Origin: Pocillopora damicornis | Lineage: Eukaryota | Direction: 5' to 3' | Assembly: GCF_003704095.1 (NCBI RefSeq) | Contig: NW_020846801.1 | Coordinates: forward strand, 434,001 to 498,000 | Length of the DNA: 64,000 bases | In this document: positions 7,050-54,500 of the stretch, piece by piece | Layout: each line of letters opens with the position of its first letter | Numbering within the stretch: the stretch's first letter is position 1 | Made by a program: the position numbers and the translations under genes | Notes under the pieces: model-generated | The model's database searches: none | What the model was told of the DNA's origin: nothing | What the model saw: only the letters and a program-made list of their open reading frames with translations

Positions 7050-10000
7050 TTATCTCGCTGCCAGGGCCTCTCTTCTTTCCGCCTGCGAGCGCGAAGAGAG
7101 GAAATATTCACCGAAAAATCCTAGAAGCTTAAATATGTTTGTTGACCAGCCTGTTACATGGATAGGATGGGCTCCTGGTAAGGTGTCAAACCTCCAAACA
7201 GATTGCTGTAAAGAGCACTGGGCATAAGCGTGAGAATAGTTTCCTACAACGGTCAACTGAAAGACGATTCGTGCTCGGACTTGAAGTGTAAAGTATTTTT
7301 CTTTTTCAGTATTGCATGTCATGCAAATCTTTGGATTGATATCCCCTCCCTCCCACAAAAAAATCAAGAACTAGATTTTCCTTAGACTTGATAATAGCCA
7401 CTGATCGGGAAAAGAGCCCGCGCTGAATTATCATTTTCACGATCGGTTTTTGGTTAAATGGAGTAATCACTACCTGCCTAATCTGTTTAATATAGATGAC
7501 GTACGCTATGCTCTAATATCACTACCAAAATATTGAATCGTCATCATTACAATATATAAAGAGAGATTCAATTATGAATTTTAAAAAAAAGACGATTTCA
7601 AAAGAAAACCTCACGCACTCCATATCACTTGGTCACCTAATATTGCCCGGAAAGCTATTATGTTCACCTTCGAAAACTGTCACACCACCACCATTATCTC
7701 CAGCTTAACATCTTACCAAGAGAACATAGTTATTTGAAAGGAAGAGAAGAAACCTACAAATCTTAGACATAAGATAATTTGTTCAATGGCTTTTTGTAAT
7801 ATCATACATACAAATTAGTTACACATTCCGATAATTTTAAAACAAAACTGTAATATGCAAATTTGAGAACTAGTTGATACGAAACTTACTCGTCTGAGAA
7901 TGAGATGAATGGTAAAGCTTCTTCACAGATGAATGTTAGAATAAATGGCTTTGTCACTGTCTCTATTTGATCAAAGACGCGAAGTAAAAGACTGACACGG
8001 ATACATAATTGGTTTATATATTTCCTCCAATTGACAGTAAATCACGTCTCACAATATTAGAATTGCTATGTCACTTTAGATTTACGCGGGGTCTCCTTTA
8101 CGTCACATCTGTGCGCATTGAGGGGGCGGTATAGGAAATAGCATCTTTTATCGCAAAGAAACCGCGAAAACGCTCCTTGCAAAATTACAGTGACTTAATG
8201 GAGTTTCAAGTTGGAGAATTGAAAAATTCTCCGGGAAAGTCAAGAGTTTAGCTTGAAGTTGGACATTATACTTGCTGACTACATCCGCTGAAAAGGGACC
8301 GAGATGTACGTTGTTTATCTCAGTAATTTCCGGTGCTGGGTTTTCAAATGTCATCGCTTTCTCTTTCTCAAAATGGCCTGAACGTGAACGGATATTCACT
8401 TCGTTAGGTTTAATCAAACGTGCTACGGGAAAAGGAACAAGAGCTAAGGAACTACTTTTCTTATTTAATCAGCACATTCAGATTTCGTCTGAATTTTTTT
8501 AAAACCGTTTGAAAACTTTGGATTAGGTCATGGTTTATCCTAGCAGCGAAGACGTTTCACTCTCAGATTTTCTGAATAATAAAAGTAGCATATTCCAATC
8601 AGGGATCTGCACCTGAATTAGACTCCAAAGGGAGACACCTCCCTTGATGATAGTCATGACTCTCCTCTTTCTCATTATGGAACAACTCTGAAATTGAAGT
8701 ATTTAAAGCTTTCGTCTTCGGCTCTCCAAGCCCTTCGTAGAATACTGGTGTAAGAATCAAATCTTTGTCATACGCGTAAGTATACACCAGCTGATAAAAC
8801 CTAATCGGCATTAATTGAGAAAACACTGACACAAATACATTGGTACAACTATGAAAAAGAGCGAAAGTAAAAAATTTAAACAAAACTCACGGTAATCAAG
8901 CGAACAGAAATAAAAAAGAGCAGCTGAAAAAATAAGAAATAAAGTCGCTGTTCCGAATCGATACTGAAATCTCACAATCACTGTTAACCCTTCAACTCCC
9001 AAGATCTCTTTAGTAATTCTTCTAACTGTCCACACTCAGTTCTTGTGAGGCTAGTTTGGAGAATTTGGTATTGGATCAACTTATAATCCCTAACTGATAT
9101 TTTTCTTGATTCTCATCACTTGCCTGCTTGGTATTGTATTGATATTGTAAGGAGAAATTCTGTCTTGGTCACTCATGAGAGTTAAAGGTTAACTGAAATG
9201 TAAGGAGAGCATTGTTGAGTGACTCTTTCTAATCTCTTTCTGGTTTCTTTCCCTGACGCCTCGTGTTCACGATGTTCTAATTATACACATGCTGTACTTA
9301 TCACAACGTTTTTGAATAAGGCCAAGGGTAATCTGTAGAAATAATTGATTGCCCTAAAAGTCAGTTTCCGTCAAAACTTCCGTTAGCTGAGGAAAGCTGC
9401 GATCAGCAATCTCGTGTTTTGAGATTTTGCCAGGACCACCGTGGATATTGCTTCAAGGAGGCACCCAACTCAGAAATACTCTGGTGAAAATCTTGAGCAA
9501 ATGATATTAGTAGGCTTAAAAAATTGAAAAGAAATATTGTCACGATTTGGTTTGGTCAGTAACGAAAACCATGGTAATGTTTTGGCATAAAGCGTACGAT
9601 CAATCGAATCAGAGTTGGTAACTGGTGAACCAAACATCTTAATAAAAACATGACAGAAAAAAGTAGTGTTCATGGCGTGAGGTTTGACAAATGCAATGTA
9701 AACCAAGTCATGAATGGTGAAAGAAAGACATTTAGATATTTCATTTTGTCGACTTGATCGTGTGTTAATTCAGAAAACTCGCGGGAAAGGGAGAACGCGT
9801 GCATTTGCATTTGTGTTCGGACCGCGCTCGTGTTAGAACACGCACGTGATACGCTATGCCTTTGTTCCCCGCCTTTTTGTGTCAGGGACAGCCAGCGCTG
9901 GCTGGTTGTTATCCGTTTGTGTTATTTCAGGTACATTTCTAGTCTTGGCTATCACCCTATAAAAATTTTATGCGTTTGTTCTTTGCTTCGTTGTATTCCA

Positions 10001-28980: not shown

Positions 28981-30118
28981 ACCGAATTTTTAGTCACCGA
29001 AGGCTCATCTGACCTTTGTCTTCATGTCGTGATGTTTCCTTCACCGAGAAACAGATGTACGCTGTACATCGAAACCAAGAATTAAGATTTATATCAGAAA
29101 AGTGAGGAAAAAACAATAAGGTACATGCTATGGACATGAGAAAGAAGTGTGAGGACCTATAGAGACGTTTCTCGACTAAGTTTTACAACCATCTTCGGCT
29201 TGTTTGGACAGAAAACTAAGAAAATTACATCTTGGAACAGTGGTAATGAAAGGTTTTTAAACGGTCGGATGACTTGTTCTGGCTTCACTTGTCCGCTTTA
29301 GTTATAAAAAATGTTATTACGAGGGTGTTCAAGAGTTTGAAGAGATTTTTATTGCAATAGTTTCAATTTAGGTACCCATTTAACTGCAAGATGTCCCCGA
29401 TAACTTTTAAGAAATAAGTGGCCTACTTTCTAAAATGATTCGATTGATTACAGCAAAGCATCCTTTAGTACTTTAGTTTTTTGCTATTACGCTGTGATTG
29501 GCTGACATTAAGTTCGTACTATTTTCGCCAATTACATGCTTACAATACTAAAGCCGATCGGAAACTTTGTCACACACATTTCCCACGCATGCGTACTTTC
29601 TGTGATTACCTCGGTAGTTTTGATAGTTGTCATTGGTCAATGTTATATTTCTTTCACGTGGAAAGTCACTTTGTTGTTGTAATTTTCTTTCTTTTTGACA
29701 GGGGAGGGGTAGGGGATTAACTTTTGTATCAACGACAGGATGTGGGTGGGTATTTATTTTAAAAATTAATCCCCCTCTTGGAAACCAATTATTATCATAC
29801 TTTGACAGAATAAAAAATTTTCGCAACAGAGTTAGGCTACACTTGAAATTGCTAATATGTCAGAGGTGAATCGATGAAGCATTCGCGGCTAAAATATGAA
29901 ATCTTTACCCGTCTAGTCCCTTAGTGTCTCTAATAATGGTCAGGAAAGCATGATAGGCATCAAGCAGCGTTTTAAATGTCACTTCCTAAATATTCCTAAA
30001 GAGCTTAACTTAAATTTTTGCCATTTACGTATGTGAATTGTTATGGTCTTAGTTCGCCTATGTTTACTGTGATGACGCTATAGGATTTTCTAATGATACA
30101 TTGGTTCCCTGAAAATTA

Positions 30119-33100
30119 TCACTCAAGACTGGAAAAGTCAAAAGCACATTCATTAACTGGCTCGCGCTCCACAGCTTCGACTTTTTCCTCTTCAATGAAA
30201 TCCATAGGGGCACTTTCTTGTACCTTTTCTATTACTGGCACTGTTAGTAGATCCTCCACAGGGATCCCAACCTTCTCGGGTTCATCTTTGGCAATTTCCA
30301 GTCCCCTGTGGTAGCGAGGCTTTCTTCGTACTTCCAGTACAACTATCTCCTCCTCGAATTCATCATATTCCTCATCTTGTTCGTCTTCACTTTCTTCTTC
30401 CTCTTCCTCGTCTTCTGGTGTGGGAGGTGGTTGGGGTGATGGCGGTTTCTCTTCTTTTTTCTCTTTCTCTTTTTCCTTGACCACGTCTTCAAGACTAAGA
30501 ATATCGATAACAGGCTTGTCCCGTTTCGTGACTTGAGGATGGATCTTGCTCTCGTTAGCAACAGGTTCTGGTTCCTTCTTGGTTGTGAAATCTCTTGGGT
30601 AATTTAGGTGAACAGTTATGTCTGAAGTTCCATGGCTTCGGCGTGTTGTTTCAGGCGAAGACTTTTTCTCCATCCACTCTGGGACGTGAATACGGGACTC
30701 CTTCGTCACAGCTGTTATCGGGTGGTCGTTGCCATGACCGGAACTCTTCGTAGAGTGCTCGACTACTGTCGTGCCTCCTCCGCCTCCAATCGTCTTGGTG
30801 AAGACCGACCGATGGTAAGATGTGCTGTTTCCGACATTGTCTCCTCCTGTTGACTCAGTACTGATTGTCGTATGGCCTCTGGTCGTAAACTTGAGGTCGT
30901 GGTTTCCAAACGGCTGCCCTTTGATGTCGAAGTTGATCTTACTCACTTCATCCGCTGGAGGCTTGTTGCCAAACTGCAGGAGCACTTCTCCGCTGCTTAT
31001 CTCTTTAGTGGTGGGTCCGTCGTTGTTGGATGTCGTTCTCTTCGTGGTTGTTGTTGTTACAATCGTCTTCTTAATTATTCGTCGAACTCTCCGGCCATTC
31101 TCATCGACGAATTCCCTGACTTCCACATCCTCATCTTTGTCAACTCCTCCATGGTTACCTTCCATTTGTAATATATCCCTCGTAAGGTGTTTACCATCAT
31201 CACCGTTATCAGATGTTGTTTTCGTCGAAGTCGTTGTCACCGTTGTCAGCACACGTCGTACGCGCCGTCCGTTTTCGTCCGTGTACCACATAGTATCGTC
31301 GTCTTCGTTTTCAATATCTTCGTCTTTTTTATCCCCTTCGTCTTTTTTATCTCCTTCGTCTTTTTTATCTCCTTCGTCTTTTTTATCCCCTTCGTCGTCC
31401 TTAACTTCTTCGTCGCTATTAGATTTCACCACTGTGCTTCCGTTTTCTTTCACGGTGTCTTCCGGCAACTCTTCGGGTTTTAGTAAGTTAATGTTTTCGT
31501 CTGCGTTCAAGTCTTTATCAGCGCCGTACGCGACTTTAACCCGCGGTTTTTCTTCGGGTTCGCCACGTAAACAGCACGGGCAACACCACCTTAAACAAGC
31601 TGTGAGAAAAAAAAATTACAAACGTCATCACCATTATTATTACTAACATCATCATCATTTATTAGTCACTTCAGAAGTAACATTTATAAAAATTCAATAG
31701 TATGGTAGAGAGGAGGAGACCCACAAGAAATCTTCAGGCTTCTGGGGGAGGCTAGCTTGGTTATTAATATGTTTGCAATTAGGTTGTGGATGTGCAGCTT
31801 GACCAATTCAGACTCATTTCATTTGAAATTCAATCATCTGTTTTTTTTTTTTTTTTTATGTAGAAAAGCTAGTCGAACCATTGATTGATATTGGAAGAGA
31901 ATTCCAAATTTTAGGACCTCAGTGGAGTATTGTAAACTGCTTAAGATTAGAGAAAGATTTTTTTTCGTCTTGTCACGGGCGTAGGACAAAGAAAAAATTC
32001 TGAGTCCCCATGAGAAATCGAACTCAGACTTTCGGATTCCGCGCTCCAATGCTCTACCACTGAGCCACAGAGAGTTCGCGGTTGAGCATCGGAGCGCGGA
32101 ATCCGAAGGTCTGAGGTTTGATTCCTCGTAGGGACGAGACGAATGCATCTTTTTCTATTTCTTTAGCGAGCTCAAAACTTACCAACTCTCTCATTCTATT
32201 TACTCAAGATTAGTTTGATAAACGTGAGTGGATAAACAAACAAATATTTTTAGTGGGTGCCAACAATCCATATATCCGCTTCTGAAATTCTATCACGTTT
32301 ATTTCAGTAGTCGTTAATATCAATTGTGTCTTAATTTAAGGTTTTGCTGTGATGTGGTGAAGCTATGGCGAACATTACGTCAATTGATATCGCCTGCGCC
32401 AAAGGGTCAGTGCTTAACTGAGACGGCACTTCACCCATCAGATATTGGATCAGGGGAGATTAAAATAAGGCGGAATCATCTTAGATGTAAAGCTAATACA
32501 ATTTTACACTCTCCGACAAGGAAAAAAAGTTTCATTCTCCTTCAACTTTTAGGTTTACAAATTGTACTGTCTCGTATTAAGTTGGACGTTGTTTTAACTT
32601 GTAAAATGTTTGATTTTGAGCTGTCGTCAGTGAAGCATAAATCGATCTTGAAAGTTTGAAAAAACACCGCAAACAATGGAGACTAAAAATAAACGTAGTA
32701 TTCGAAATATCGCTTTCTACTCAAACGTGTGCGTCATTTATCTGTTCTCTCACTCAATTGGTTATGGAAAATTTGGGCTCTATGCAGCATTAAAACTTGT
32801 GCTTTTGCAGTAACTTTCGAAATAGCGGCATAAAAGGTGTATTTCGCTTACAGATAACTTGATTTCCGCCGGAGGCATCGTGCCATATGGCGAGCGAATA
32901 CGATCTTGTGGATTTAAATCTTCCTAAAAAGTTCCAACGTAATAAAAATGTTATCTGAAAAATTCTCCTGACTTGCTCCTACCGAGAAAGCAATGGCAAA
33001 GAACTAAAGTATATCTAGCCCTCCACAAAACCAGCGGGATAAAACGATTTCGACTCTTATAAACACAATTGTACACCAGCGTGAGAATCAAAATAACATG

Positions 33101-33241
33101 TCGAAAATTCCTTGATCCGCAAAGATCCTCACTCCAGAATCTGAAACACTTAAGATTTTAAACTTTGCAACTCTTCTGGTGGCAAAACAATCCAATGTCC
33201 AAGGTGTATAACGGATGAGGATCTTAAAACCTACCTTTCAT
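30119..33241 (-). CDS. Uncharacterised acidic/Thr-rich protein, 495 aa, N-terminal Cys cluster; paralog of the 37.3-38.3 kb gene
   Basis: Micro coding exon 33241-33235 (ATG AAA G|GTAGG) splices in phase to ttttctcacAG|31599-30119, giving MKACLRWCCPCCLRGEPEEKPRVKV... continuous with the 463-aa ORF. The exon 1 assignment is inferred. Confidence 0.8.
31319..31396 (-). repeat. Coding 18-bp tandem repeat (DEGDKK x4)
   Basis: TTCGTCTTTTTTATCYCC units on the plus strand. Confidence 0.9.
31958..32200. mobile_element. Inverted pair of tRNA-derived SINE fragments
   Basis: Minus copy: TGGCTCAGTGGTAGAGC (A box) ...GCGGAATCCGAA...GTTCGATTTC (B box). It is followed directly by a plus copy GGTTGAGCATCGGAGCGCGGAATCCGAAGGTCTGAGGTTTGATTCCTC. 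Confidence 0.75.
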
Positions 33242-35511
33242 CGTAAATCAAGAGAATATTCCTTATTTACAATCTGACGAAAAGCGTGGAAATAACCGAT
33301 GTATGGAAAGAAGTGCTCCCTATAATCCAGGGGGTTTTTGGTTAATCCCGTGATCTCGTGATCGTACCGTGATACACGCGAACTTTATATTTCGATTTTC
33401 GTCGTGCTCTGAACTGAAAAGGCGCGGTTTTGTGAAAGCACAGTGAATAATTTCGATACTTAATTGACAACAGAAGCGACCAATGAAGCGTGTGAAAATC
33501 TGCGAATGAGCTAGACGTGGTGGACCACGTGTAAATACCGATAGAATGCTGAATTTACGTGGATTTACGAGGCGTCCACGAACTACCCATATACACGCGA
33601 TCAGATGCTGTTAAAATTTCGTGGTTATGGTATTAAGAATTCCACTGCGGTGAAATTTTTAGGCACTTTCATTTTGAGTTCCCAGATCTACACGCATCAT
33701 CGTGCCTTGACGCCCATAATCTTCATGTATAGAATGCATTTTCATGCAAATTTTATTGCTTAACGGTTCTTTGATTGATTTACACGTGAAATCATCCGTG
33801 ACAGCATTGTGTTCACGAAAGCATCTGAGGAGCAACGGCTTTTAAGAAGTAATCTCATAGTTTGTTTATTTATTTATTTTTTTTGAATGAAGATTAAAAT
33901 AGTTTTTAGAAATAAATTTTGCTACGCAACTCAGGTAGAAATAGGTAAACCTCATATGCCAAATTCTAATTATATCCTAACTTCAGGTCATGTCGAGGAA
34001 TCAATTCAGGAATGTTCGCTTAAAATCATACCTTAATCGTCCTTAAATTTAGTTCAGTTGCAGAATTTAAAGTACTGTTTTAGTTAAAGTAAAACGATTC
34101 ATACGACGTTACATTCGAAATGCCTGACAAAGAGGAACAAGTCTTACAGTTTTTGCGACTGCTATAGCAGTAATTACAAACCTTGATAATGAGGTGAAAA
34201 AAAATCGTGCATAAATCTTACGCAGTAATGAACTTTACTTAAATACTTATCTAAAAAAGGTTGGATAAATGATTGAAAAGCTCACCGAAAGGAATTCCAA
34301 ACCACACCGCCGACCTCCTTGCGGCGTACCGAGGTACTCTTGCAGACATGTTGTATATACGATGAGGTCTTCTTTACAACTTTGTTATAATTATAACAAA
34401 AGTGGGTTGCTCAATTTATGAATATTTATATGTAATTTAAAAAAAATGGTACGATGTGTCCGCTGCACAATATATTTAATTTTACCAACTAAAAACATAA
34501 GATAAGTGATTATCTTTACCATTTTTGTTTTCTGTAATTCAAATCAAATTTTGAAAAACATTTTTAAGAGCTAAAAAATCAACAACTAACTTTTATTGAT
34601 TTTATGCATGTCTTTGTTTAGGAAAGGATCGTGAACTTTAGAACAAACCAGAAACAATAGGAAAGTTGAGTAACAAGAAATATAAATTTTTCTCTGGGCT
34701 GTTTCCTTGTGTTTAGCGGTTTCTAAAATTCATTAAACCATTTTTTGAAGAACTGACGATTCTGGAGATATGAAATGCATTTTTTAAATTACTTTTGTTT
34801 CGTGTATACAACTTGAAAACTATAAATTATCTCATAAAAGTCTCGAAGATTGTGCGGTCGCCAAGACCAAAAATGTTATCACGTAGGTATGTATGACATT
34901 AAATTGTTTAATGACTCTGGTAGGGAAGTGGACTGGTCTTCAAGCATTTAAATCTGCCATCGAATCTTCGTCTTTTCCATGTTTACAAAACAGAAAATAG
35001 TTGACAAAATATAAGTTCCGATGAAACAGTTCAACCTCAAATACCCTTAAGGCTTCTCATTTGTTTCAAAAGCTTTGGCCGAATTTGCTAGATAGTGGAA
35101 CTCACTGGTTTTCATCACTTACCTGTTTCCACTGGTCAGCTAAAAGTTGCTGCCTGCCCGGGTTAAGTCGTGATTATCGTGCCTCACCTTAAGTGCTTCT
35201 AAGACACGCTTTGAGCTTAATCTCGAACAGAAAGGCTTTGAGGGTGAACAATAAAATAACTCAACCTTGTCTAATCCACTATGATTTACTACTGAAATGA
35301 TTTAACTCTGGATTGTTCGATGCATGATTGGATCAACTTTTTTTATTTTCTTTTGTCAGCCTTTTGTGGTCTCTCTCCCTTGTTTGGTGTTAAGCTCCTT
35401 AAACCGAAAGCAGGTTGAACCGTTCCCGCTAAACAGTATTGAGGCCCAGGATAAATTCTGAACCTGGATCAAGGTTAATCAGCGGTTTTAGAAAAACTTC
35501 CAAGACTTGCT

Positions 35512-35722
35512 GAACTCTTTCACTCCCATGATCTCTTTAGTAATTCTCCCTACTGTTTGCCATACATTGCTTGTAATTTTGGTTGAAAGAATTTGTTATT
35601 GAATCAAATGATAACCCACTAATTGATATTTTAATATATTCTTATCACTTGTCTGCTTGATATTGTATTGATATTGTAGGGACAAATTCTGTCTTGGTTA
35701 CTACTGGGAGTGAAAGGGTTAA
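35512..35722. mobile_element. piggyBac-type MITE, subfamily A
   Basis: Same core as 8984 and 26164; ends GAAAGGGTTAA. Confidence 0.75.
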
Positions 35723-37361
35723 AAATCCTTCATTTCGTTTCAACTGACGTCTTGAATTCTCTAATTCTACCAAAAGTACCACGAAGCTTTCGATAATGGC
35801 ATGTTGAATATTCAAGGCTGGACCTCTTGAAAAAGTGGGCGGACGTCGCCTATGCTTCACGTTTGTTTCCATTCACAAGCATTCTGCTGGAACATTCCAA
35901 TCCTTATTTCTTCCTTCTTCGGTGCCGACCGAAGTCACGCAGTTTTATCAGAGGTTTCGCAAGGAACTGCGAGTCGAGGCTCGCTCCAGATCTCCACACG
36001 TTTCTCAAGTCACGGATCTATGATTCAGAGAATCCTGGGAATCGAGGGAACCCAACATATAACTTCGTCCCCAACCCTCACGCCCGGACCCCTCGCGAAT
36101 TAACACGCTTGCTCATTCTAAGTTTAAGACAAGGCGAGTATTGTACTGAGCTCAAACTTACCACTTGAAAAATTATTAATTACAACCCCTTTAACATATT
36201 CAGTCAAAGCGGAATCTTATCGTCAGCTTCTACGAGTTCCACAGCAGTCAAATTGCATAGCGAGGGAGTTTATTTGCATACAAACAACAATGCTTAATTG
36301 ATATTCAATTACTAAGTTTTCTGACTCGTAGCAGCACACAGAACAAATGTTTGCCATAAGTCATTTTCCCTTAGAGCTCGGGAGGTATCATTTCTGAGAG
36401 TAGATTGAAGTCGTGTCAAATGTTTTGAAAAGTTTATTGCAAATTCTTCACAATAATATTGATAAAAATCCGCTTAACTTCTTTTGAATCCAGCGGAAGT
36501 CACTATATTTGAACCATTTGCGAGACAAAATTTAAAACAGGAGATGAACTTTGTTCGTTTGTCTCACGACAGAGTCTATCGTGACTCTATCATGAAACAA
36601 ACGAACAAAGTTCGTCTCCTATCTTACACTACGATGAACAATAAGCACATATTTTATTACAAAATTTAAAATGTTCAAACTTTCTTAGATTCACTTTATC
36701 TTTTTTTTTTAGACCAGCGCCTTCGAAATTCTTTTTGTCCTCAAACTAATGCTGCTAGGATTAAATTTTGACTGCATTCAAATTAACATCCCTACCAATG
36801 TCAGACCAAGAATAGAACAACAATAGAAGGGGTTAACCTTCCAGACAACAATTCCCTGGTGATTTCAAAATAACATAAGGGCCTTGCTTGTTGATAAAAC
36901 ATATTCCAATCGGCCTAAAAGTATAATTCTTGAGCAGGGCTTTAACACGCAAAGACAACCGTTGCAAATTTGCAAGGCTTGGCAAACGAGGACAAAGTGA
37001 GTGCTTGCGCTGCAAACAATGTGATCAAATGTTAAATTGTTCGCTTCTAAAACGTGTAATTCCAAACTGATTTGCATGCATCATTCACAGCTCGCTGTCA
37101 TTACACATTCGTTTTTCTTTTATTAATGTCCTTTCCTTCATTACAGGGGCGTGTTTATCCATGGTCTACAAGCTAGAAGTGTACTCCGGGTATTCCGAAG
37201 AAACGCTAGGATTTTAAACAGCGGTGAAAACTCTAACAAACGTAGCAGCTTTTTCGAAATTTCATCAAGCCTGAGCAAAAAGACAGTGCAGATAAATCAA
37301 ACAAGGTTGAAATTTGCAAACTTAATCCGTGCAGAGACAACAGCGAGTGCAAATCAGAGTA

Positions 37362-38267
37362 ATGGCGCACACAGAACGGCAAGAAAGTCAATCTAGACGA
37401 GTGGTGCGAACTTCCATGGTCTCGACCACAACTAGAACAACTTCTGTACGACGTGTGAGCAGTGAACGCAGAGAGGTCAAAATGGAAATTAAAGGCTCGC
37501 CTTTTCCGGCACAAGAAGTTAATTTGTTTACTCGACATGTCTTTGACTCCAGCACGGAATCTAAGCGTTGGCAAAGTGGCAGCAACAATAGCATCGACTT
37601 CAACTCTTTTGATCGGCGATCACTCCCATTCAACACCTCTGGAGTCGGCAGAACGCAAACTGAAGCCCGAGGTGTGACTGAAAATGGTTCAAAGTCTTCC
37701 GGTAGTGACTACGAACCCCCTATGGAGGCAGTCGTCAAAGAAAAATCTGACATTCAGACACCGGAGTGGATGGCAGAGAAGCAATCACCCGAGCCAAAGC
37801 GTAAGATCTATGACACCGCACTAATCGATCTTTTGTTGAAATATCCGTTGGATAATTCTCCTAAGGCAAGCATTCTGGACCCGAAGAAGACAAAATACGA
37901 GAGTCGAATCCGCCCTGAAGTCGCCAAACGAGAGAAAGCAGGTATTCCTATTCTAAGCCTTGATGATTTTGACAAAAAAGATGACAATAATGACGATGAT
38001 GATTACGACGAATTCGAGGAGGTGATTGTGGTTATGGATGTGCAAAGAAAACCGATATGGCGAAAGGGATTGGAAAAACCGAAACCACAGCCTTTTAAAG
38101 TCGGGACTCGCGTCGAGGATCTTCTTCAGCTCCCCGCTGCCAAGCCAAAAGTGAAGTCATACAACGACACTGACAAGTCGTCTGTTGATGAGAAAATTGA
38201 GAGTGTGGAACGCCCGCCAGTGGTTCATGAGGGACTGGACCTGGAAGGTATCCTCGAGAACCTGTGA
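37362..38267 (+). CDS. Uncharacterised protein (~301 aa from the first ATG); paralog of the 30.1-33.2 kb gene
   Basis: Long ORF whose C-terminal ~180 aa align collinearly with the minus-strand gene (PEWM, L.YP.D, ES.I.P.V.KR.K..I.ILSL.D, YDEFEE.IVV..V.RKP...GLE, KVG..VEDLL..P, EK.E.VER.PV). The start could instead be spliced in at the CAG at 37334. Confidence 0.8.
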   Translation: MAHTERQESQSRRVVRTSMVSTTTRTTSVRRVSSERREVKMEIKGSPFPAQEVNLFTRHVFDSSTESKRWQSGSNNSIDFNSFDRRSLPFNTSGVGRTQTEARGVTENGSKSSGSDYEPPMEAVVKEKSDIQTPEWMAEKQSPEPKRKIYDTALIDLLLKYPLDNSPKASILDPKKTKYESRIRPEVAKREKAGIPILSLDDFDKKDDNNDDDDYDEFEEVIVVMDVQRKPIWRKGLEKPKPQPFKVGTRVEDLLQLPAAKPKVKSYNDTDKSSVDEKIESVERPPVVHEGLDLEGILENL

Positions 38268-38942
38268 CCTGTGCAAAGTGTGCTACAGTACAGTTCACGA
38301 GAGAAGAGGCATATTTTCAGATTTGAATGATTTACACTTAATTCGATTTGATGAATTAAGCAGCGGCTTTTTTCTAAAAAAAATTTCAATAAGTCCACAT
38401 GAAACAGTTTTTCGAGACTGCCATTGATTTTACTTTTTGAAGTTTCAGTGCGTCGCCTTTTTAAGTTGTCGAACCCTTAACAGAAACATTGTGTCACCTC
38501 AAAAAGAAACAGCAACAAAACATAATAATCATAGGTGAAAAATACTGAAACAGGAACCACAAACTGAAACTGAAACTAAGCTCTTTTATTTTGGTCTTTT
38601 TTCTATGTTTTTACCATTTGTTAACTGTCATTTTTCATGTTTTCATCTTTATCTTTCCTGTTACATTTTTCATTACAAATCAATATGACACAAGTAACGT
38701 TTAGTAACAGTACAGTTTCGTTATGTTATTTATTATTCAGGCAGTGCTAACTTGTCACCATACTGATGAAGTGATAAAAGTGTGAGACAAACATTCGTGC
38801 ACATCTTCCATAACTTTGAAACCATTATTTTACATTTATTTTGCGTCTAGAATTTCTTTGGGGGAATTTCTTTGTGGTGATCAGAGGTAAAATACCCAAA
38901 CCGAAAGTTAAACGAATTTCTCTCTTTAGATGACCGTTTCAT

Positions 38943-40016: not shown

Positions 40017-40664
40017 CTACAATGATTGTGTCCATGGTTTGTCATCACGCCGCTGTTTCTCGAAGGCTGCCAAAGCTCGCTTCGGTGGAACAAGTGAGTC
40101 GGTTACTCCTGATTTTCGTTTCTTCTTCGAAGGTTCCCATCTTTCTTCTCCTTCGTCTGGTTCGTATCTTGTCCCTGCAGTTGAAATAGTTCCAGCTAAA
40201 CTAGGCTCTCTGGGTTTTTCAGTTCCAGGATTAACAGATCCTGAATCGATGCCATGCAAAAACTTACAGCGGTCTCCCATTCTGCATCGTCCTTTCTGAA
40301 ACTTGAAACAAATCTTATTCGATTTTTGTTCGTCTTTTTCAGATTTTCCTTCCGAAAGTTGTACATGTTTCTCCAAAACTGATAGTTTCTTTTTCTCTTC
40401 AGCAAGAAATGGGTTAAAGAATACGGAAGAAGTCTTGTAAGCTCGCTGGTTGAGTTCCTTAGAGGCAGATCGAGATGAACAACTATCTGTACTTACATCC
40501 AACGATGGTAATGGAAGTGGTATTTGAGCTTCTCCTCCCTTATTGCCGGAATTGTTGTCATTGATACTTGTACTAGATTCGCAATCTTTACTCTCTTCCT
40601 CATCAGATCCAGAGGAACTGCTAGAATCGCTGCCATAATCCGGAACAAGTCCAAGAAGTGACAT
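40017..40664 (-). CDS. Intronless CCCH zinc-finger protein, 215 aa
   Basis: ATG start; C-x7-C-x5-C-x3-H (CFKFQKGRCRMGDRCKFLH); N-terminal LVPDYGSDS, SVFFNPF...LEKHV and a basic KKKRK. Confidence 0.85.
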   Translation of the reverse strand: MSLLGLVPDYGSDSSSSSGSDEEESKDCESSTSINDNNSGNKGGEAQIPLPLPSLDVSTDSCSSRSASKELNQRAYKTSSVFFNPFLAEEKKKLSVLEKHVQLSEGKSEKDEQKSNKICFKFQKGRCRMGDRCKFLHGIDSGSVNPGTEKPREPSLAGTISTAGTRYEPDEGEERWEPSKKKRKSGVTDSLVPPKRALAAFEKQRRDDKPWTQSL

Positions 40665-51594: not shown

Positions 51595-54500
51595 GACGAT
51601 AAATAACGACTGATCCCTTAAACCACGTAATCTTAATCGAGTTCAGCACCAACCAAGTGAGTCAAAAAAAAGGAACTAGAAAGTCTCAATTAAAGCTCAG
51701 AGTAATTTTCAATTGAGCTTTGTAAAGTAATCCGGGGTTACCTTGGTTTCACCTCACCACGCTCCGTGATTGGTCCAGAAAAAAACTTGAGCCATCTTCT
51801 CAAGCAATCAGATGTAAAACTAAAATCTACTGCAAATTATTCATCGGCGTTTTCCTTGCCCTTTTATCAATTTGTTTGTTTTCACTTTAAGATCTAATTG
51901 GCTAATGATGATGTAAACCTTTCTACTGATTGGTTGATGTGATTAGCAAGGATTTGGTCTTTCGACACTCAATTAAAAACGCTATAAAGCTACAAGGGAT
52001 TTATAATAAACACGTAAAAGCTAACAAAAGGGGAACGGACATACATATGTCGACACGATCAAGAGAAGAGTTGCGTAGATTTGGTTAATTACTTCCCTAA
52101 GAAACAAGTAGAAAATTTGAATCTCTTGTCCTGACGTCATCACTATTGTGGTCATCTTTTGCTCTGGAGAGATCAGCCAGAGGAAAAAAAAAATTTCTGA
52201 CCAACTTGCTTCCAAAGGGGACATATCGCTTACCATTAACTTCTTCCTTTTTACATTCTTTCAAACACGATTCCTTCGTTAGAAAATTGTTTTTGTTTCC
52301 TCCACAACCTCCATAAGTAAACTTCTCACACTCTCCAGTCAGGCTGTTGTAGTAGAAACGGGGCATCGCTGCTTTGCATAACCCTATTTCCATCGGAAGA
52401 CTGCAATGGTTTCCCGAGCCTAAAAGGTTGACAGAAAGGTAAAATTGATCCTGATTTCTCAATATACGAACCTAACGAAATTAATTACGAACGAAATTAC
52501 ATCTTATCACTCTTTAAGAGGGTTAAATTATCTAAAATCAGTATTATAACAAAAACATTTCCATTAAACAATCGTGGTAATTTTTTAAACGAACATGCCA
52601 ACTTTAGCAATGTATTGCGAAATTTTACGCGCTGTCGCATCAACTGTCTGAGTAATAATAACCCTAAAAGAACGTCTGGATGTTCGTCAAAGTTGAGACC
52701 GACCTCGACTTCTTCAGAGTTGTTATGTTGTTATATACAAGTGTGTGTTACTCGGACGAAGCTATTCGAGGTAACTTAAGTATACAAGATACTTTCCGAG
52801 ACGAGGTATCTCCAAATGATGATTTGTTTGCATAATCTTAAGTATTTGCATAATCTTAAGTATTTAAGTGAAATCTAGCGAAATTCACCACTTTAGTAGA
52901 TAAATACATTATTTCTGGCGAGAATTTAAGAAAAATCAGTCTCGGATCAAAGTAAACAAATCGTTTTTCTATCCCTGGTAGATAATTTGAACACGGAAAT
53001 CAAATCAAAACAAAAAAGAAAAGACTAACGGCTAAAAAAGGGAAAATCTAATTTGACTTGAACTTGACGCAGGCTCGAATTGACTAGTGATACGATATAA
53101 ATCTTGACTTTTTAATCATTTAAAATTAGTACACGGGTACTCAAATCGGCAGGAAAAGGAATCGATTGGGAGGGATCTTTACATTTTATTCATGATCTAT
53201 CTTTGAATCACATCTGTGATATGAATAATTGAAATGTGTTTCAAAATCAATCAATACGACAGAAATTTATCTAATTCGTATAATAATAATCGTCTTTTGC
53301 ATTATCATACCACTCGAAATACACTGTTACATCACCGAAACCCAAAGTCTTACGGAAAAAATCATACATACCTTTGCCTATCATTTACTGAATGCTATAA
53401 CTGGAATAATTAAGAAAAATCCGACGAGAAAATTATAGCAAAATACACCGCACTTATTGCTAATATCTCGTTATCCCTCGTTTTACCGTTTCCTCTCAAC
53501 AACCTATATTCTTATCGATATCGTCATATCTATCGCAGGGGTTTCAATTAAGGCTGGTTTCGGTCTAACGCTGCCATTAAGACCTCCTAACGCCATCTGT
53601 TCAGCTTACGTGTAAGATCGCTTGTTTGGGTTTCGCCTAACGACACAGCTGCCTATTTCAGCCGCTTGGGAAAAAAAAAAATTAATGAAACCCCTGCTGT
53701 TGTATTTTTTTCCTTTTCATCTCAGAACAAATATCACCCGACAAAAGGGCATATAATTATTCTCCAATATTCTCTGTCCTTTCCATCTCTTAATTGTTGG
53801 TACTTATCCTTTTCTTGTTTAAATTTATCTTTTATGATAATTTATTATCATCACGTTGGAAAATATAATGAAATTAAGGATAGTATAGACAAAAGCACGG
53901 AGGCAAGGAAATTGAATTAATGAACGTGTTTGTTCTAGTTAGGATCAAAATACAATTGTTATAATTTTTAAACAAATAGATTTATTGTGACGGAAATAAT
54001 TCTTTCCACCGTGGCTAAGGCAAAAGTCGGCGCGGAGGAAACCAAGTGGGCAAAGGGTGAGCGGAGGAGAAGTCGCGAAAGACAGACTCAAGAGAACATA
54101 GCATCACCATGTGCCTCAATTAACGCGATCTCTCGCTGAGCTAACAATTCTCCTGATCAGAGAAATGGGAATGGAAAGGACTGATGGGCAAGATAAACGA
54201 AAACTTAGTGTCTGTCCCCATATGGAGAAAAATTCATCGTGTTCTAGTTGCTAGGCTACATAACGGCGATCATTAGAACGCGAAATTTCCATGACGAACT
54301 TAACTAGTTTCATGTGATGAAATACGAATAAAGGCGATCCATTTCGGCAAAAAAAACTGGTAGATAACAATTTTCTTGCATATGGTGTCATTTAGTTCGG
54401 AATTTCTTCTTCTGTAATTTAGAATCTTTCCGCATTAGCGACAAAATTGTTTATTTAGACAAATTTTCTGTCATCACCAGCACTTTACAAGTGCGGATGA

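What the first reader, a model, noticed from the sequence alone, without database searches (positions are those of the whole stretch)
30119..38267. Head-to-head paralog pair defines an unrecognised ~180-aa C-terminal module
Seen: two divergent genes ~4 kb apart have unrelated low-complexity N-termini but collinear C-terminal blocks: (1) ES.I..PEWM.[KE]K.SPE..R; (2) I...L.YP.D; (3) ES.I.P.V.KR.K..I.ILSL[ED]D; an acidic linker; (4) YDEFEE.IVV[LM][ED]V.RKP...[RK]GLE....P.KVG..VEDLL.[VL]P; (5) EK[VI]E.VER.PV......[FL]D...[LI]E at the end. Blocks 1-3 and 4-5 look faintly like an internal repeat (ES.I.P twice; ILSL.D vs VEDLL). DNA identity is low, so the blocks are probably under purifying selection. 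I do not recognise the family. Inference: an extended multi-motif ligand that binds a scaffold, delivered in a membrane-tethered version (minus gene) and a soluble version (plus gene).
Basis: partly seen in the sequence, partly recalled or inferred. Interest (0 to 1): 0.75.

Follow-up and report, generated by a model that had tools for sequence, protein, structure and literature searches.

The report
Coral disordered paralog pair, spectraplakin-exon kin
Two neighbouring, oppositely oriented coral genes encode related acidic, unstructured proteins whose conserved short motifs recur in a giant repeat exon of a cytoskeletal linker gene; one copy carries a probable lipid-anchor motif, and the family has no described function.

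Summary
The minus ORF (30119-31510) and the plus ORF (37329-38267) share 36% identity over 283 aa (E 2e-32).

Both genes appear spliced in polyA-RNA contigs. Neither matches Pfam or any PDB sequence.

The shared part is about 270 aa, not 180. AlphaFold2 gives no fold (mean pLDDT 50.6 and 45.9). I read it as an ordered series of short motifs in a disordered acidic chain.

The same motif types build the super-repeats of a giant exon, found in this genome and in Nematostella A7SF37. That exon lies among spectrin-repeat exons, upstream of a GAR domain, as in a spectraplakin.

The minus gene has no transmembrane segment. Its main isoform starts with a conserved CCPCC cysteine cluster, a known palmitoylation motif. 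The plus gene lacks it.

Binding partners are unknown. The faint internal repeat is not supported.

An earlier scan note (s1-777660) described the giant exon on another piece of this genome, not this pair.

The parts
30119..31599 (-). Main (last) coding exon of the minus gene, stop codon included. The splice acceptor is at 31599.
   Evidence: The frame is open from 31597 down to the stop at 30119-30121. Contigs of 4 of 4 RNA runs end or jump exactly at 31599, and the skipped stretch ends CT..AC, which is GT..AG on the minus strand. A polypyrimidine tract and AG precede it.
33235..33700 (-). First exon 1a of the minus gene: 5'UTR plus the first 7 coding bases (ATG at 33241-33239, donor after 33235).
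   Evidence: The joint 31599->33235 is seen in 2 of 4 runs (X5, X12). X12 contig 9 covers 33235-33700. The sequence reads ...ATGAAAG|GT. The resulting N-terminus equals that of Stylophora isoform X3, P0299.
35123..35200 (-). Alternative first exon 1b of the minus gene. The upper limit is uncertain, and the exon is non-coding in the gene's frame.
   Evidence: The joint 31599->35123 is seen in 2 of 4 runs (X1, X9), with only 22-30 letters on the short side. An in-frame TGA lies four codons before the donor (my reading).
31571..31597 (-). Codons for the N-terminal cysteine cluster (C..CCPCC), the candidate S-palmitoylation site.
   Evidence: Translation. CCPCC is the palmitoylated motif of PI4KII-alpha (abstract of PMC3974213).
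31214..31285 (-). First DENG unit (acidic, then DENGRRVRR, then a threonine run).
   Evidence: Alignment A1. BLASTP against the giant P0062 gives E 3e-12. AF2 models a hairpin at E103-106/E112-115.
31037..31114 (-). Second DENG unit.
   Evidence: AF2 models a hairpin at E158-164/E170-176, with block pLDDT about 59.
30122..30937 (-). Part of the minus protein shared with the plus protein (residues 192-463 of the listed ORF).
   Evidence: BLASTP, E 2e-32.
30485..30700 (-). Blocks 1-3: the PEWM motif at 30638-30700, the ..YP.D motif at 30590-30619, and the ES.I.P.V.KR.K..I.ILSL motif at 30485-30553. Together they form one unit of the giant exon's super-repeat.
   Evidence: Conservation. hhalign against 42 giant units gives E 1.2e-5 over 76 collinear columns. 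The unit occurs in two or three tandem copies in plus-type orthologs P0008 and P0030.
30236..30367 (-). Block 4: YDEFEEEIVV.EV.RKP...GLE...G.P.EDLL..P, preceded by an acidic linker of variable length.
   Evidence: It holds 10 of the 14 invariant columns of A1. hhalign against the DEF units of eight giants and the small P0083 gives Prob 97.9, E 4.6e-13 over 45 columns.
30122..30220 (-). Block 5, the C-terminal tail (QESAP...EK[VI]E.VER.PV...).
   Evidence: It was not detected in the giants (the alignment stops after 45 columns).
36883..36996 (+). 5'UTR exon of the plus gene.
   Evidence: The joint 36996->37147, GT..AG, is seen in 2 of 4 runs (X5, X9). X9 contig 30 covers 36883-36996.
37147..38267 (+). 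Main exon of the plus gene. The CDS is 37362-38267 (301 aa plus stop). The part shared with the minus protein is 37476-38264.
   Evidence: The exon start at 37147 is shown by contigs of X1, X5 and X9. A stop codon lies 13 codons upstream of the ATG at 37362, in frame. BLASTP.

Best explanation
SHOWN:
- These are two divergently transcribed, expressed paralogs. Each has its whole reading frame, or all but seven bases of it, in one exon.
- They belong to a protein family whose three named members are all hexacorals (Stylophora, Montipora, Nematostella).
- The proteins are acidic and predicted to have no globular fold.
- What is conserved is an ordered series of short motifs: one or two DENG/threonine hairpin units; G.PF; TKTIGGG..VEHSTK; I..PEWM; LKYP.DY; NES.I.PEVAKRDK; an acidic run followed by YDEFEEEIVV.EV.RKP; G.P.EDLL..P; and EKIE.VER.PV.
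- The DENG unit, the PEWM-to-NES unit and the acidic-EEIVV unit are the building blocks of a giant repeat exon. That exon lies inside a spectraplakin-like gene (spectrin-repeat exons on both sides, a GAR domain downstream) on another contig of this genome. It also occurs in Nematostella protein A7SF37.
- The pair are therefore small stand-alone relatives of that exon.

INFERRED:
- The motifs are docking sites for one or more partners that the giant linker also binds.
- The minus protein's main isoform begins with a conserved CCPCC cysteine cluster. It is probably S-palmitoylated, which would hold the motif array at a membrane.
- The plus protein lacks the cluster and would offer a shorter array in the cytosol. 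A possible second minus isoform starting at a downstream Met would also lack it.
- Together they would act as an adaptor, or as a competitor for the same partner.
For: Paralogy: E 2e-32.

Expression and splicing: 13 RNA runs (22 runs from 7 studies listed in all) hold 0.30-0.38 of the locus words. Spliced contigs were seen in 4 of 4 laid runs.

Family size and conservation:
- 49 hits.
- 58 hits with E<=1e-3 among 1.84 billion representatives.
- Conservation is block-wise.
- pS is saturated while pN is 0.26-0.33 in the blocks.
- The plus type forms a clade of 18 of 42 rows (support 98/97). Both types have many diverged members.

No fold: mean pLDDT 50.6 with pTM 0.15, and 45.9 with pTM 0.17. 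Disorder-promoting residues make up 65-68%.

Link to the giant exon:
- BLASTP against the giant P0062: E 3e-12 for the DENG units and 4e-4 for the EEIVV unit.
- hhalign: E 1.2e-5 for blocks 1-3 and 4.6e-13 for block 4.
- Own-genome locus C2697.
- Spectrin repeats in the flanking exons, Pfam E 6.4e-77.
- The best GAS2/GAR hit of the genome lies on the same strand about 61 kb downstream.

Cysteine cluster:
- for the window gene.
- The same N-terminus in Stylophora RefSeq isoform X3.
- Conservation in orthologs down to 52% identity.
- CCPCC is a known palmitoylation motif (abstract of PMC3974213).
Against: - No partner, localisation or acylation was tested.
- Low AF2 confidence with alignments of only 37-42 sequences does not prove disorder. 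A fold that forms on binding or oligomerisation would look the same.
- The units taken from the giants for hhalign were picked by a motif pattern, so part of those scores is by construction.
- The PEWM unit alone is not significant in pairwise BLASTP (E 0.36).
- Block 5 and the EDLL..P motif were not found in the giants.
- In this genome the giant exon lacks the EEIVV unit.
- That the giant exon is spliced into the spectraplakin transcript rests on same-strand position only.
- The joint to exon 1b has a short side of only 22-30 letters.
Confidence: 0.5

Rival explanations
1. The shared C-terminal part is a real folded domain of a new kind that AlphaFold2 fails to model because the alignment is shallow. 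It might fold only as an oligomer or with a cofactor.
For: Invariant hydrophobic and aromatic positions (Y304, F385, V390, L404, L421, L422, P425). Local pLDDT reaches 64-73 at the PEWM and IVV..EDLL stretches.
Against: pTM is 0.15-0.17 in both runs, and apart from the DENG hairpins there is no secondary structure longer than one helix. Conserved blocks are separated by linkers of variable length. The blocks 1-3 unit varies from 1 to 3 copies between orthologs. Disorder-promoting residues make up 65-68%.
Confidence: 0.15
2. The proteins are secreted acidic skeletal-matrix proteins of the coral, of the acid-rich-protein type, that bind calcium carbonate.
For: The organism is a coral. The protein is acidic (pI 4.7) and has a long Glu/Asp run.
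Against: There is no hydrophobic N-terminal signal: the highest KD19 values, 0.48-0.90, lie near the C-terminus or mid-chain. The N-terminus is a cytosolic-type cysteine cluster. The motifs are shared with an intracellular cytoskeletal linker, and with the non-calcifying Nematostella.
Confidence: 0.05
3. The proteins are Myb-like nuclear DNA-binding proteins, as the RefSeq name of the Stylophora ortholog ('myb-like protein V') suggests.
For: Only the automatic name.
Against: No Myb/SANT or other DNA-binding domain matches either protein at E<=1. The name most likely reflects low-complexity similarity (my inference).
Confidence: 0.02
4. The genes are non-functional leftovers: partial duplicates of the giant exon that drift and are transcribed only incidentally.
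For: The coding sequence sits in a single exon, as expected for a piece copied from a giant exon. Most of the sequence is low-complexity.
Against: The frames are intact in dozens of diverged relatives, and invariant columns persist at 35-57% overall identity. pN is well below a saturated pS. Two orthogroups are kept apart. Both genes are spliced with dedicated 5' exons and seen in polyA RNA of four studies.
Confidence: 0.03

Closest known systems
Giant 'DENG/PEWM' repeat exon of anthozoan spectraplakin-like genes (Nematostella vectensis A7SF37 / XP_001629770.1; Montipora foliosa XP_068678676.1; own genome C2697:68.3-71.6 kb). All are annotated only as uncharacterized.
   Same: The DENG-hairpin unit, the PEWM..YP..I.PE unit and the acidic-EEIVV.E.KR unit are shared and partly collinear.
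   Different: The window genes are 301 aa (plus) and about 495 aa (minus: 3 codons from exon 1a plus 492 in the main exon). They are stand-alone and have no spectrin repeats, CH or GAR domains. They carry one unit of each kind instead of up to 17. They add a tail (EDLL..P, EKIE.VER.PV) and, in the minus type, a CCPCC N-terminus not seen in the giants.
N-terminally or internally S-palmitoylated cysteine-cluster proteins: PI4KII-alpha with its CCPCC motif (abstract of PMC3974213), and, from recall only, the GAP-43/BASP1/MARCKS class of lipid-anchored acidic disordered proteins.
   Same: The same CCPCC string, an acidic disordered chain behind a lipid-anchor-type motif, and no transmembrane segment.
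   Different: There is no sequence homology beyond the cluster. Acylation was not shown. There is no kinase domain, IQ motif or effector domain.
Plakin (plectin) repeat module of bilaterian spectraplakins.
   Same: It is an optional repeat module carried by a large exon of a spectraplakin. According to passages of PMC9145010, plectin repeats arose in Bilateria, so cnidarian spectraplakins lack them.
   Different: No similarity was found: Pfam PF00681 is not among the hits for five giants. Plakin repeats fold into globular domains, whereas here only hairpins in a disordered chain are predicted. A like function is speculation.
'myb-like protein V' (RefSeq name of the Stylophora pistillata ortholog, XP_022790614-6).
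   Same: These are the orthologs: 84-85% identity to the minus protein.
   Different: The name is not backed by any Myb domain.

Membership tests
Myb/SANT DNA-binding proteins (name given to the Stylophora ortholog) | A Myb/SANT helix-turn-helix domain | tested here: not met
   hmmscan against Pfam-A at E<=1 returned only DUF3439 (17.3 bits, cut-off 27.1) and LTXXQ (11.7 bits, cut-off 24.3).
Spectraplakins (dystonin/MACF1/Shot) | Calponin-homology domains, a plakin domain and a spectrin-repeat rod | tested here: not met
   Neither window protein has any of these. They occur only around the giant relative on contig C2697.
Spectraplakins (dystonin/MACF1/Shot) | A C-terminal EF-hand and GAR (GAS2) domain | tested here: not met
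   Absent from the window genes. The GAR hit lies at C2697:7508-7627, 67.6 bits.
Anthozoan DENG/PEWM repeat family (undescribed; defined here) | At least one acidic-DENG..V.R-threonine-run unit | tested here: met
   The minus gene has two canonical units. The plus gene has one degenerate unit aligned in A1.
Anthozoan DENG/PEWM repeat family (undescribed; defined here) | A PEWM..YP..I.PE unit and an acidic-EEIVV.E.[KR]R unit | tested here: met
   hhalign gives E 1.2e-5 and 4.6e-13 against the giant units. The units were picked by motif, so this is partly by construction.
S-palmitoylated cysteine-cluster proteins | A cluster of cysteines next to basic or hydrophobic residues, without a transmembrane segment | tested here: met
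   C..CCPCC at residues 4-12 of the spliced protein. The same is seen in P0299. KD19 maximum 0.69-0.90.
S-palmitoylated cysteine-cluster proteins | Thioester-linked fatty acid on those cysteines and membrane association | not testable with these tools
   Needs acyl-biotin exchange or metabolic labelling.
Secreted coral acid-rich or skeletal matrix proteins | An N-terminal signal peptide | tested here: not met
   There is no hydrophobic N-terminal stretch. The KD19 maxima lie at residues 450, 154 and 434. This is a hydropathy scan only; no signal-peptide predictor was run.

The most novel reading that the evidence does not exclude
The DENG/PEWM/EEIVV motif array is a cnidarian invention that stands in for the missing plakin-repeat module of spectraplakins as a docking surface for a filament or junction system. 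On this reading the window pair would be its membrane receptor and buffer. The palmitoylated protein would present the same docking motifs at a membrane, and the soluble paralog would titrate the partner. That would amount to a lineage-specific cytoskeleton-to-membrane linker system built from short motifs.
Probability: 0.12. Interest if true: 0.7.

Novelty: new variant of a known kind. Interest (0 to 1): 0.42.

Why it matters
Reef-building corals have many conserved genes with no assigned function. This pair gives a concrete handle on one such family. The family has a fixed set of short motifs, a probable lipid anchor in one member, and a traceable relationship to a large, undescribed repeat exon of the cytoskeletal linker spectraplakin.

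If the motifs are docking sites, small peptides from blocks 1-4 could be used to find the partner of the giant exon, which is hard to study directly. The work also corrects a misleading database name ('myb-like protein V').

The result is not a new principle. Lipid-anchored disordered adaptors and lineage-restricted motif arrays are known kinds.

Tried and rejected
- Pfam on both proteins gave nothing above cut-off.
- A PDB sequence search with the family profile, and with Nematostella P0056, gave nothing meaningful: only ribosomal eL6 at E 0.3.
- The ESM Atlas search with the minus protein gave no usable hit.
- I did not run a fold search, because both models are of low confidence (pTM 0.15 and 0.17) and matches would be meaningless.
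- The internal repeat was tested and rejected.
- ARAGORN found no tRNA in the intergenic stretch, despite a tRNA-like string at about 32030-32100. Rfam at E<=0.01 gave only sub-threshold miRNA-family matches.
- A numeric dN/dS was not obtained. The paralog comparison is saturated, and I had no DNA of close orthologs. I did not use the metagenome scan, because the JGI relatives are only 54-57% identical.
- Nesprin versus spectraplakin for the giant gene: the protein search could not discriminate, because its length window excludes nesprin-1 and nesprin-2. The GAR hit on the same strand favours spectraplakin. The KASH search was blank, but its control was silent, so it says nothing.
- A paper search for the Stylophora accessions and the name found no coral paper: 1 hit, on mosquitoes. 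Supplementary files, where coral single-cell or proteome gene lists would sit, were closed, so cell type and proteome presence remain unchecked.
- Three cluster look-ups gave names for only three species.
- My early hunches from memory (band 4.1 CTD, ankyrin motifs, paralemmin, FFAT, LIR, SxIP, clathrin box) were checked by eye against the motifs. None fits its consensus, and none was tested by a tool. The acidic-run-plus-IVV.EV string resembles the recalled consensus of SUMO-interaction motifs; this is untested.
- Conserved linkage of the pair in other corals is suggested only indirectly. In one search, three minus-type/plus-type couples (P0014/P0037, P0013/P0038, P0031/P0030) list the same longest-contig length.


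Full report
**What is there**

The window is AT-rich eukaryotic DNA (GC 0.35-0.43). Only ten ORFs of 120 aa or more occur in 64 kb.

BLASTP aligns them over 283 residues with 36% identity, E 2e-32.

**Gene structure and expression**

The minus frame stays open above the listed start, up to a polypyrimidine tract and an AG at 31599.

Thirteen runs on record as RNA (22 runs from seven studies listed in all) hold 0.30-0.38 of the sampled words of 30000-38400. I laid contigs of four RNA runs from four studies on 31401-37400.

- All four have a contig that stops or jumps exactly at 31599.
- In two runs (X5, X12) the contig continues at 33235. The skipped ends are CT..AC, which is GT..AG on the minus strand.
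- That exon ends ...ATGAAAG. It therefore supplies the start codon (33241-33239) and a phase-1 junction into the main exon.
- In the other two runs (X1, X9) the contig continues at 35123, with only 22-30 letters on that side.
- That alternative exon has an in-frame TGA four codons before its donor. It cannot supply a start codon in frame. The next in-frame ATG is inside the main exon, where the 390-aa database model P0001 begins. I treat this second isoform as tentative.
- For the plus gene, two runs (X5, X9) join 36996 to 37147 (GT..AG).
- The frame has a stop 13 codons before the ATG at 37362. The coding sequence therefore lies in one exon (37362-38267, 301 aa) behind a 5'UTR exon.

The two genes are thus head-to-head. 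Their outermost first exons lie about 1.7 kb apart.

The very high depth at 35.6-35.8 kb is not locus expression. That stretch is a roughly 165-bp interspersed repeat with 2543 first-look candidates in the genome.

**The family**

A word-indexed search with residues 190-463 of the minus protein found 49 proteins at E<=1e-3 among 3995 candidates. None was named in the listing.

A profile of 19 members, read against 1.84 billion representative proteins, found 58 at E<=1e-3. Of these, 46 were at <=1e-10 and 28 at <=1e-30.

Cluster look-ups gave names for three members. A third look-up gave no further names.

| Protein | Named record | Relation |
|---|---|---|
| P0002 cluster | Stylophora pistillata 'myb-like protein V' isoforms X1-X3 (XP_022790614-6) | 84-85% identical to the minus protein |
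| P0070 | Montipora foliosa uncharacterized protein (XP_068678676.1) | giant relative |
| P0056 | Nematostella vectensis predicted protein A7SF37 | giant relative |

All named members are hexacorals. No bilaterian, hydrozoan or other hit appeared in the exhaustive search.

A tree of the shared part (42 rows) puts the plus gene in a clade of 18 rows (support 98/97). Seventeen of these lack a canonical DENG unit. The minus gene falls with Stylophora among the long two-DENG proteins. Both types have many diverged members, so the duplication is old.

In this genome the profile finds only three loci: the two window genes and one exon on contig C2697.

**What the shared part is**

Pfam finds nothing above cut-off. 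A profile search of PDB sequences finds nothing. The ESM Atlas gives no usable hit.

AlphaFold2 was run twice.

| Protein | Alignment | Mean pLDDT | pTM | Residues at pLDDT 70 or more |
|---|---|---|---|---|
| Plus protein | 42 sequences | 50.6 | 0.15 | 22 of 301 |
| Minus main-exon protein | 37 sequences | 45.9 | 0.17 | 11 of 492 |

The only regular elements are hairpins at the DENG units and three-residue turns at PEWM and EDLL. Disorder-promoting residues make up 65-68%, and the pI is 4.7 (minus) and 5.9 (plus).

Conservation is sharply block-wise. Fourteen columns are invariant in 19 sequences: Y304, D383, E384, F385, E386, E387, V390, R396, L404, G415, D420, L421, L422 and P425. The acidic and KEKE linker varies in length.

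The unit made of blocks 1-3 is present in two or three tandem copies in plus-type orthologs P0008 and P0030. It gives two or three matched stretches in several others. This is how a repeat unit behaves, not part of a fixed fold.

Between the two paralogs synonymous differences are saturated (pS 0.79-0.90). Non-synonymous differences are 0.33 in blocks 1-3, 0.26 in block 4 and 0.50 in the tail. This fits long-standing constraint but yields no numeric dN/dS.

Blocks 1-3 against blocks 4-5 score 16.9, against a shuffle maximum of 15.3. Block 1 against block 3 gives E 0.62.

**The giant relatives**

Eighteen of the 58 hits are proteins of 356-3258 aa that match the DENG region of the profile (positions about 4-144) in 2 to 17 separate stretches. 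I read 17 of them (the 18 less P0075, P0082, P0085, P0091 and P0093, plus P0098 and the cluster members P0250 and P0083). Most show a super-repeat with these parts:

- an acidic-DENG..V.R-threonine unit;
- an FESA.P unit;
- a unit running I/V.LPEWM ... I.W.ILPS.P ...

Near the N-terminus there is one acidic-DEF.EEIVV.E.KRRP..PKWF unit, the counterpart of block 4.

The tests gave:

- BLASTP of the minus protein against P0062: E 3e-12 for the DENG units, 4e-4 for the EEIVV unit, and only 0.36 for PEWM.
- Profile-profile comparison of blocks 1-3 against 42 giant units: E 1.2e-5 over 76 collinear columns.
  - Reversed control: score 8.0.
  - 58 of 60 column shuffles scored 17.4 or less.
  - The other 2 were an 11-column end artefact.
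- Block 4 against nine DEF units (eight from giants, one from the small P0083): Prob 97.9, E 4.6e-13 over 45 columns. Reversed control: 13.2.

The units were picked by motif, so part of these scores is by construction. Block 5 and the EDLL..P motif were not found in the giants.

**What the giant is**

The giants end in a spectrin-like repeat. In Nematostella P0056 Pfam Spectrin scores 27.9 bits, just under the cut-off. Its best named relatives within the length window are dystonin, MACF1 and Shot (E down to 7e-15). That window excludes nesprin-1 and nesprin-2.

In this genome the giant exon is an 813-aa listed ORF at C2697:68.3-71.6 kb on the minus strand. It holds a masked run, which I left alone, and it lacks the EEIVV unit. 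Its surroundings on the same strand are:

- open frames with spectrin-repeat similarity upstream (76.8-87.4 kb) and downstream (67.8 to 29 kb);
- one 1216-aa frame among them scoring Pfam Spectrin E 6.4e-77 in seven stretches;
- the best GAS2/GAR match of the whole genome about 61 kb downstream (7508-7627, 67.6 bits).

That is the order of a spectraplakin. Splicing of the exon into that transcript was not shown.

Passages of PMC9145010 say that Stylophora has a true spectraplakin and that plectin repeats arose only in Bilateria.

My searches agree with it.

**The anchor**

The highest 19-residue hydropathy mean is 0.69 for the window exon and 0.90 for the complete Stylophora isoform P0299. Both are far below what a membrane helix gives, a threshold I recall as about 1.6.

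Instead, the main exon opens with C..CCPCC followed by LRGEPEEK. Together with exon 1a this gives the same N-terminus as Stylophora isoform X3, whose first 20 residues in the stored record are MKACLRWCCPCCLRGEPEEK.

The other two Stylophora isoforms use other first exons but keep the cluster. Many of these are near-identical cluster members. Ten are distinct representatives, down to 52% identity. Most of the remaining proteins are plus-type, or are models that begin inside the main exon.

CCPCC is the palmitoylated motif on which PI4KII-alpha activity depends (abstract of PMC3974213). Acylation here is an inference. The plus-type proteins have no such cluster.

**How it most likely works**

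Shown: two conserved, expressed, disordered acidic proteins that carry single copies of the motif units which a giant cytolinker exon carries in long arrays.

Inferred: the units are docking sites for a partner common to all three genes. The minus protein holds them at a membrane through palmitate. The plus protein offers them in solution, as an adaptor or competitor, and so may a shorter minus isoform.

I put about 0.5 on this overall reading. The descriptive part is far more secure than the binding part.

Rivals:

- a fold that AF2 cannot see (0.15);
- secreted skeletal matrix proteins (0.05; no signal sequence, and shared with an anemone);
- drifting duplicates (0.03);
- Myb-like DNA binders, as the RefSeq name says (0.02; no Myb domain).

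**Novelty**

The sequences are in public databases, but only as uncharacterized or misnamed entries. A full-text search for the Stylophora accessions and name found no coral paper (supplements could not be read).

The family, its motif grammar, its kinship with the spectraplakin exon and the cysteine-cluster N-terminus appear undescribed. In kind, however, it is a lineage-restricted, lipid-anchored disordered motif protein, which is a known sort of thing.

I rate it a new variant of a known kind, with interest about 0.4.

Noticed in passing
window 35560-35760: A roughly 165-bp interspersed repeat (SINE/MITE-like). It has 2543 first-look candidates in the genome, 40 of which were scored at 83-89% identity. 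It explains the very high summed contig depth there in all four RNA runs.
   Followed up: partly
window 32010-32130: A tRNA-like string lies inside an inverted or hairpin-prone element between the two genes. ARAGORN calls no tRNA, and Rfam gives only sub-threshold miRNA-family matches (30-33 bits against cut-offs of 65-88). Contig depth is high, with many loose ends, so it is probably a tRNA-derived SINE.
   Followed up: partly
window 36542-36618 (-): A sub-threshold Rfam hairpin match (MIR950, 38 bits against a cut-off of 95) in a stretch with RNA contig depth of 40-180. It is most likely another repeat and not a curated miRNA.
   Followed up: no
window 52100-52462 (-): An open frame with a clear Kunitz/BPTI protease-inhibitor domain (Pfam PF00014, E 1.7e-20).
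   Followed up: no
window 40020-40664 (-): A 215-aa ORF with a CCCH zinc finger / Torus domain (PF16131, E 1.4e-7), just downstream of the plus gene.
   Followed up: no
G000:C2697:68335-71619 (L003) and flanks L006-L011: The giant DENG/PEWM repeat exon of this genome sits among spectrin-repeat exons, with a GAR domain about 61 kb downstream on the same strand. It contains a masked run. Unlike the orthologs P0050, P0062 and P0071, it lacks the acidic-EEIVV unit.
   Followed up: partly
proteins P0008, P0030, P0038, P0043 (plus-type orthologs): The blocks 1-3 unit, or a shortened form of it in P0043, is tandemly duplicated two or three times in some species. Copy number of the unit therefore varies between corals.
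   Followed up: partly
protein P0073 (1390 aa, unnamed source): A divergent relative made of about 11 near-identical ~95-aa repeats, each holding an EEFTDDQGRVVRV-type unit followed by beta-rich VIDGKPVEP motifs. Its organism and its relation to spectraplakin are unknown.
   Followed up: no
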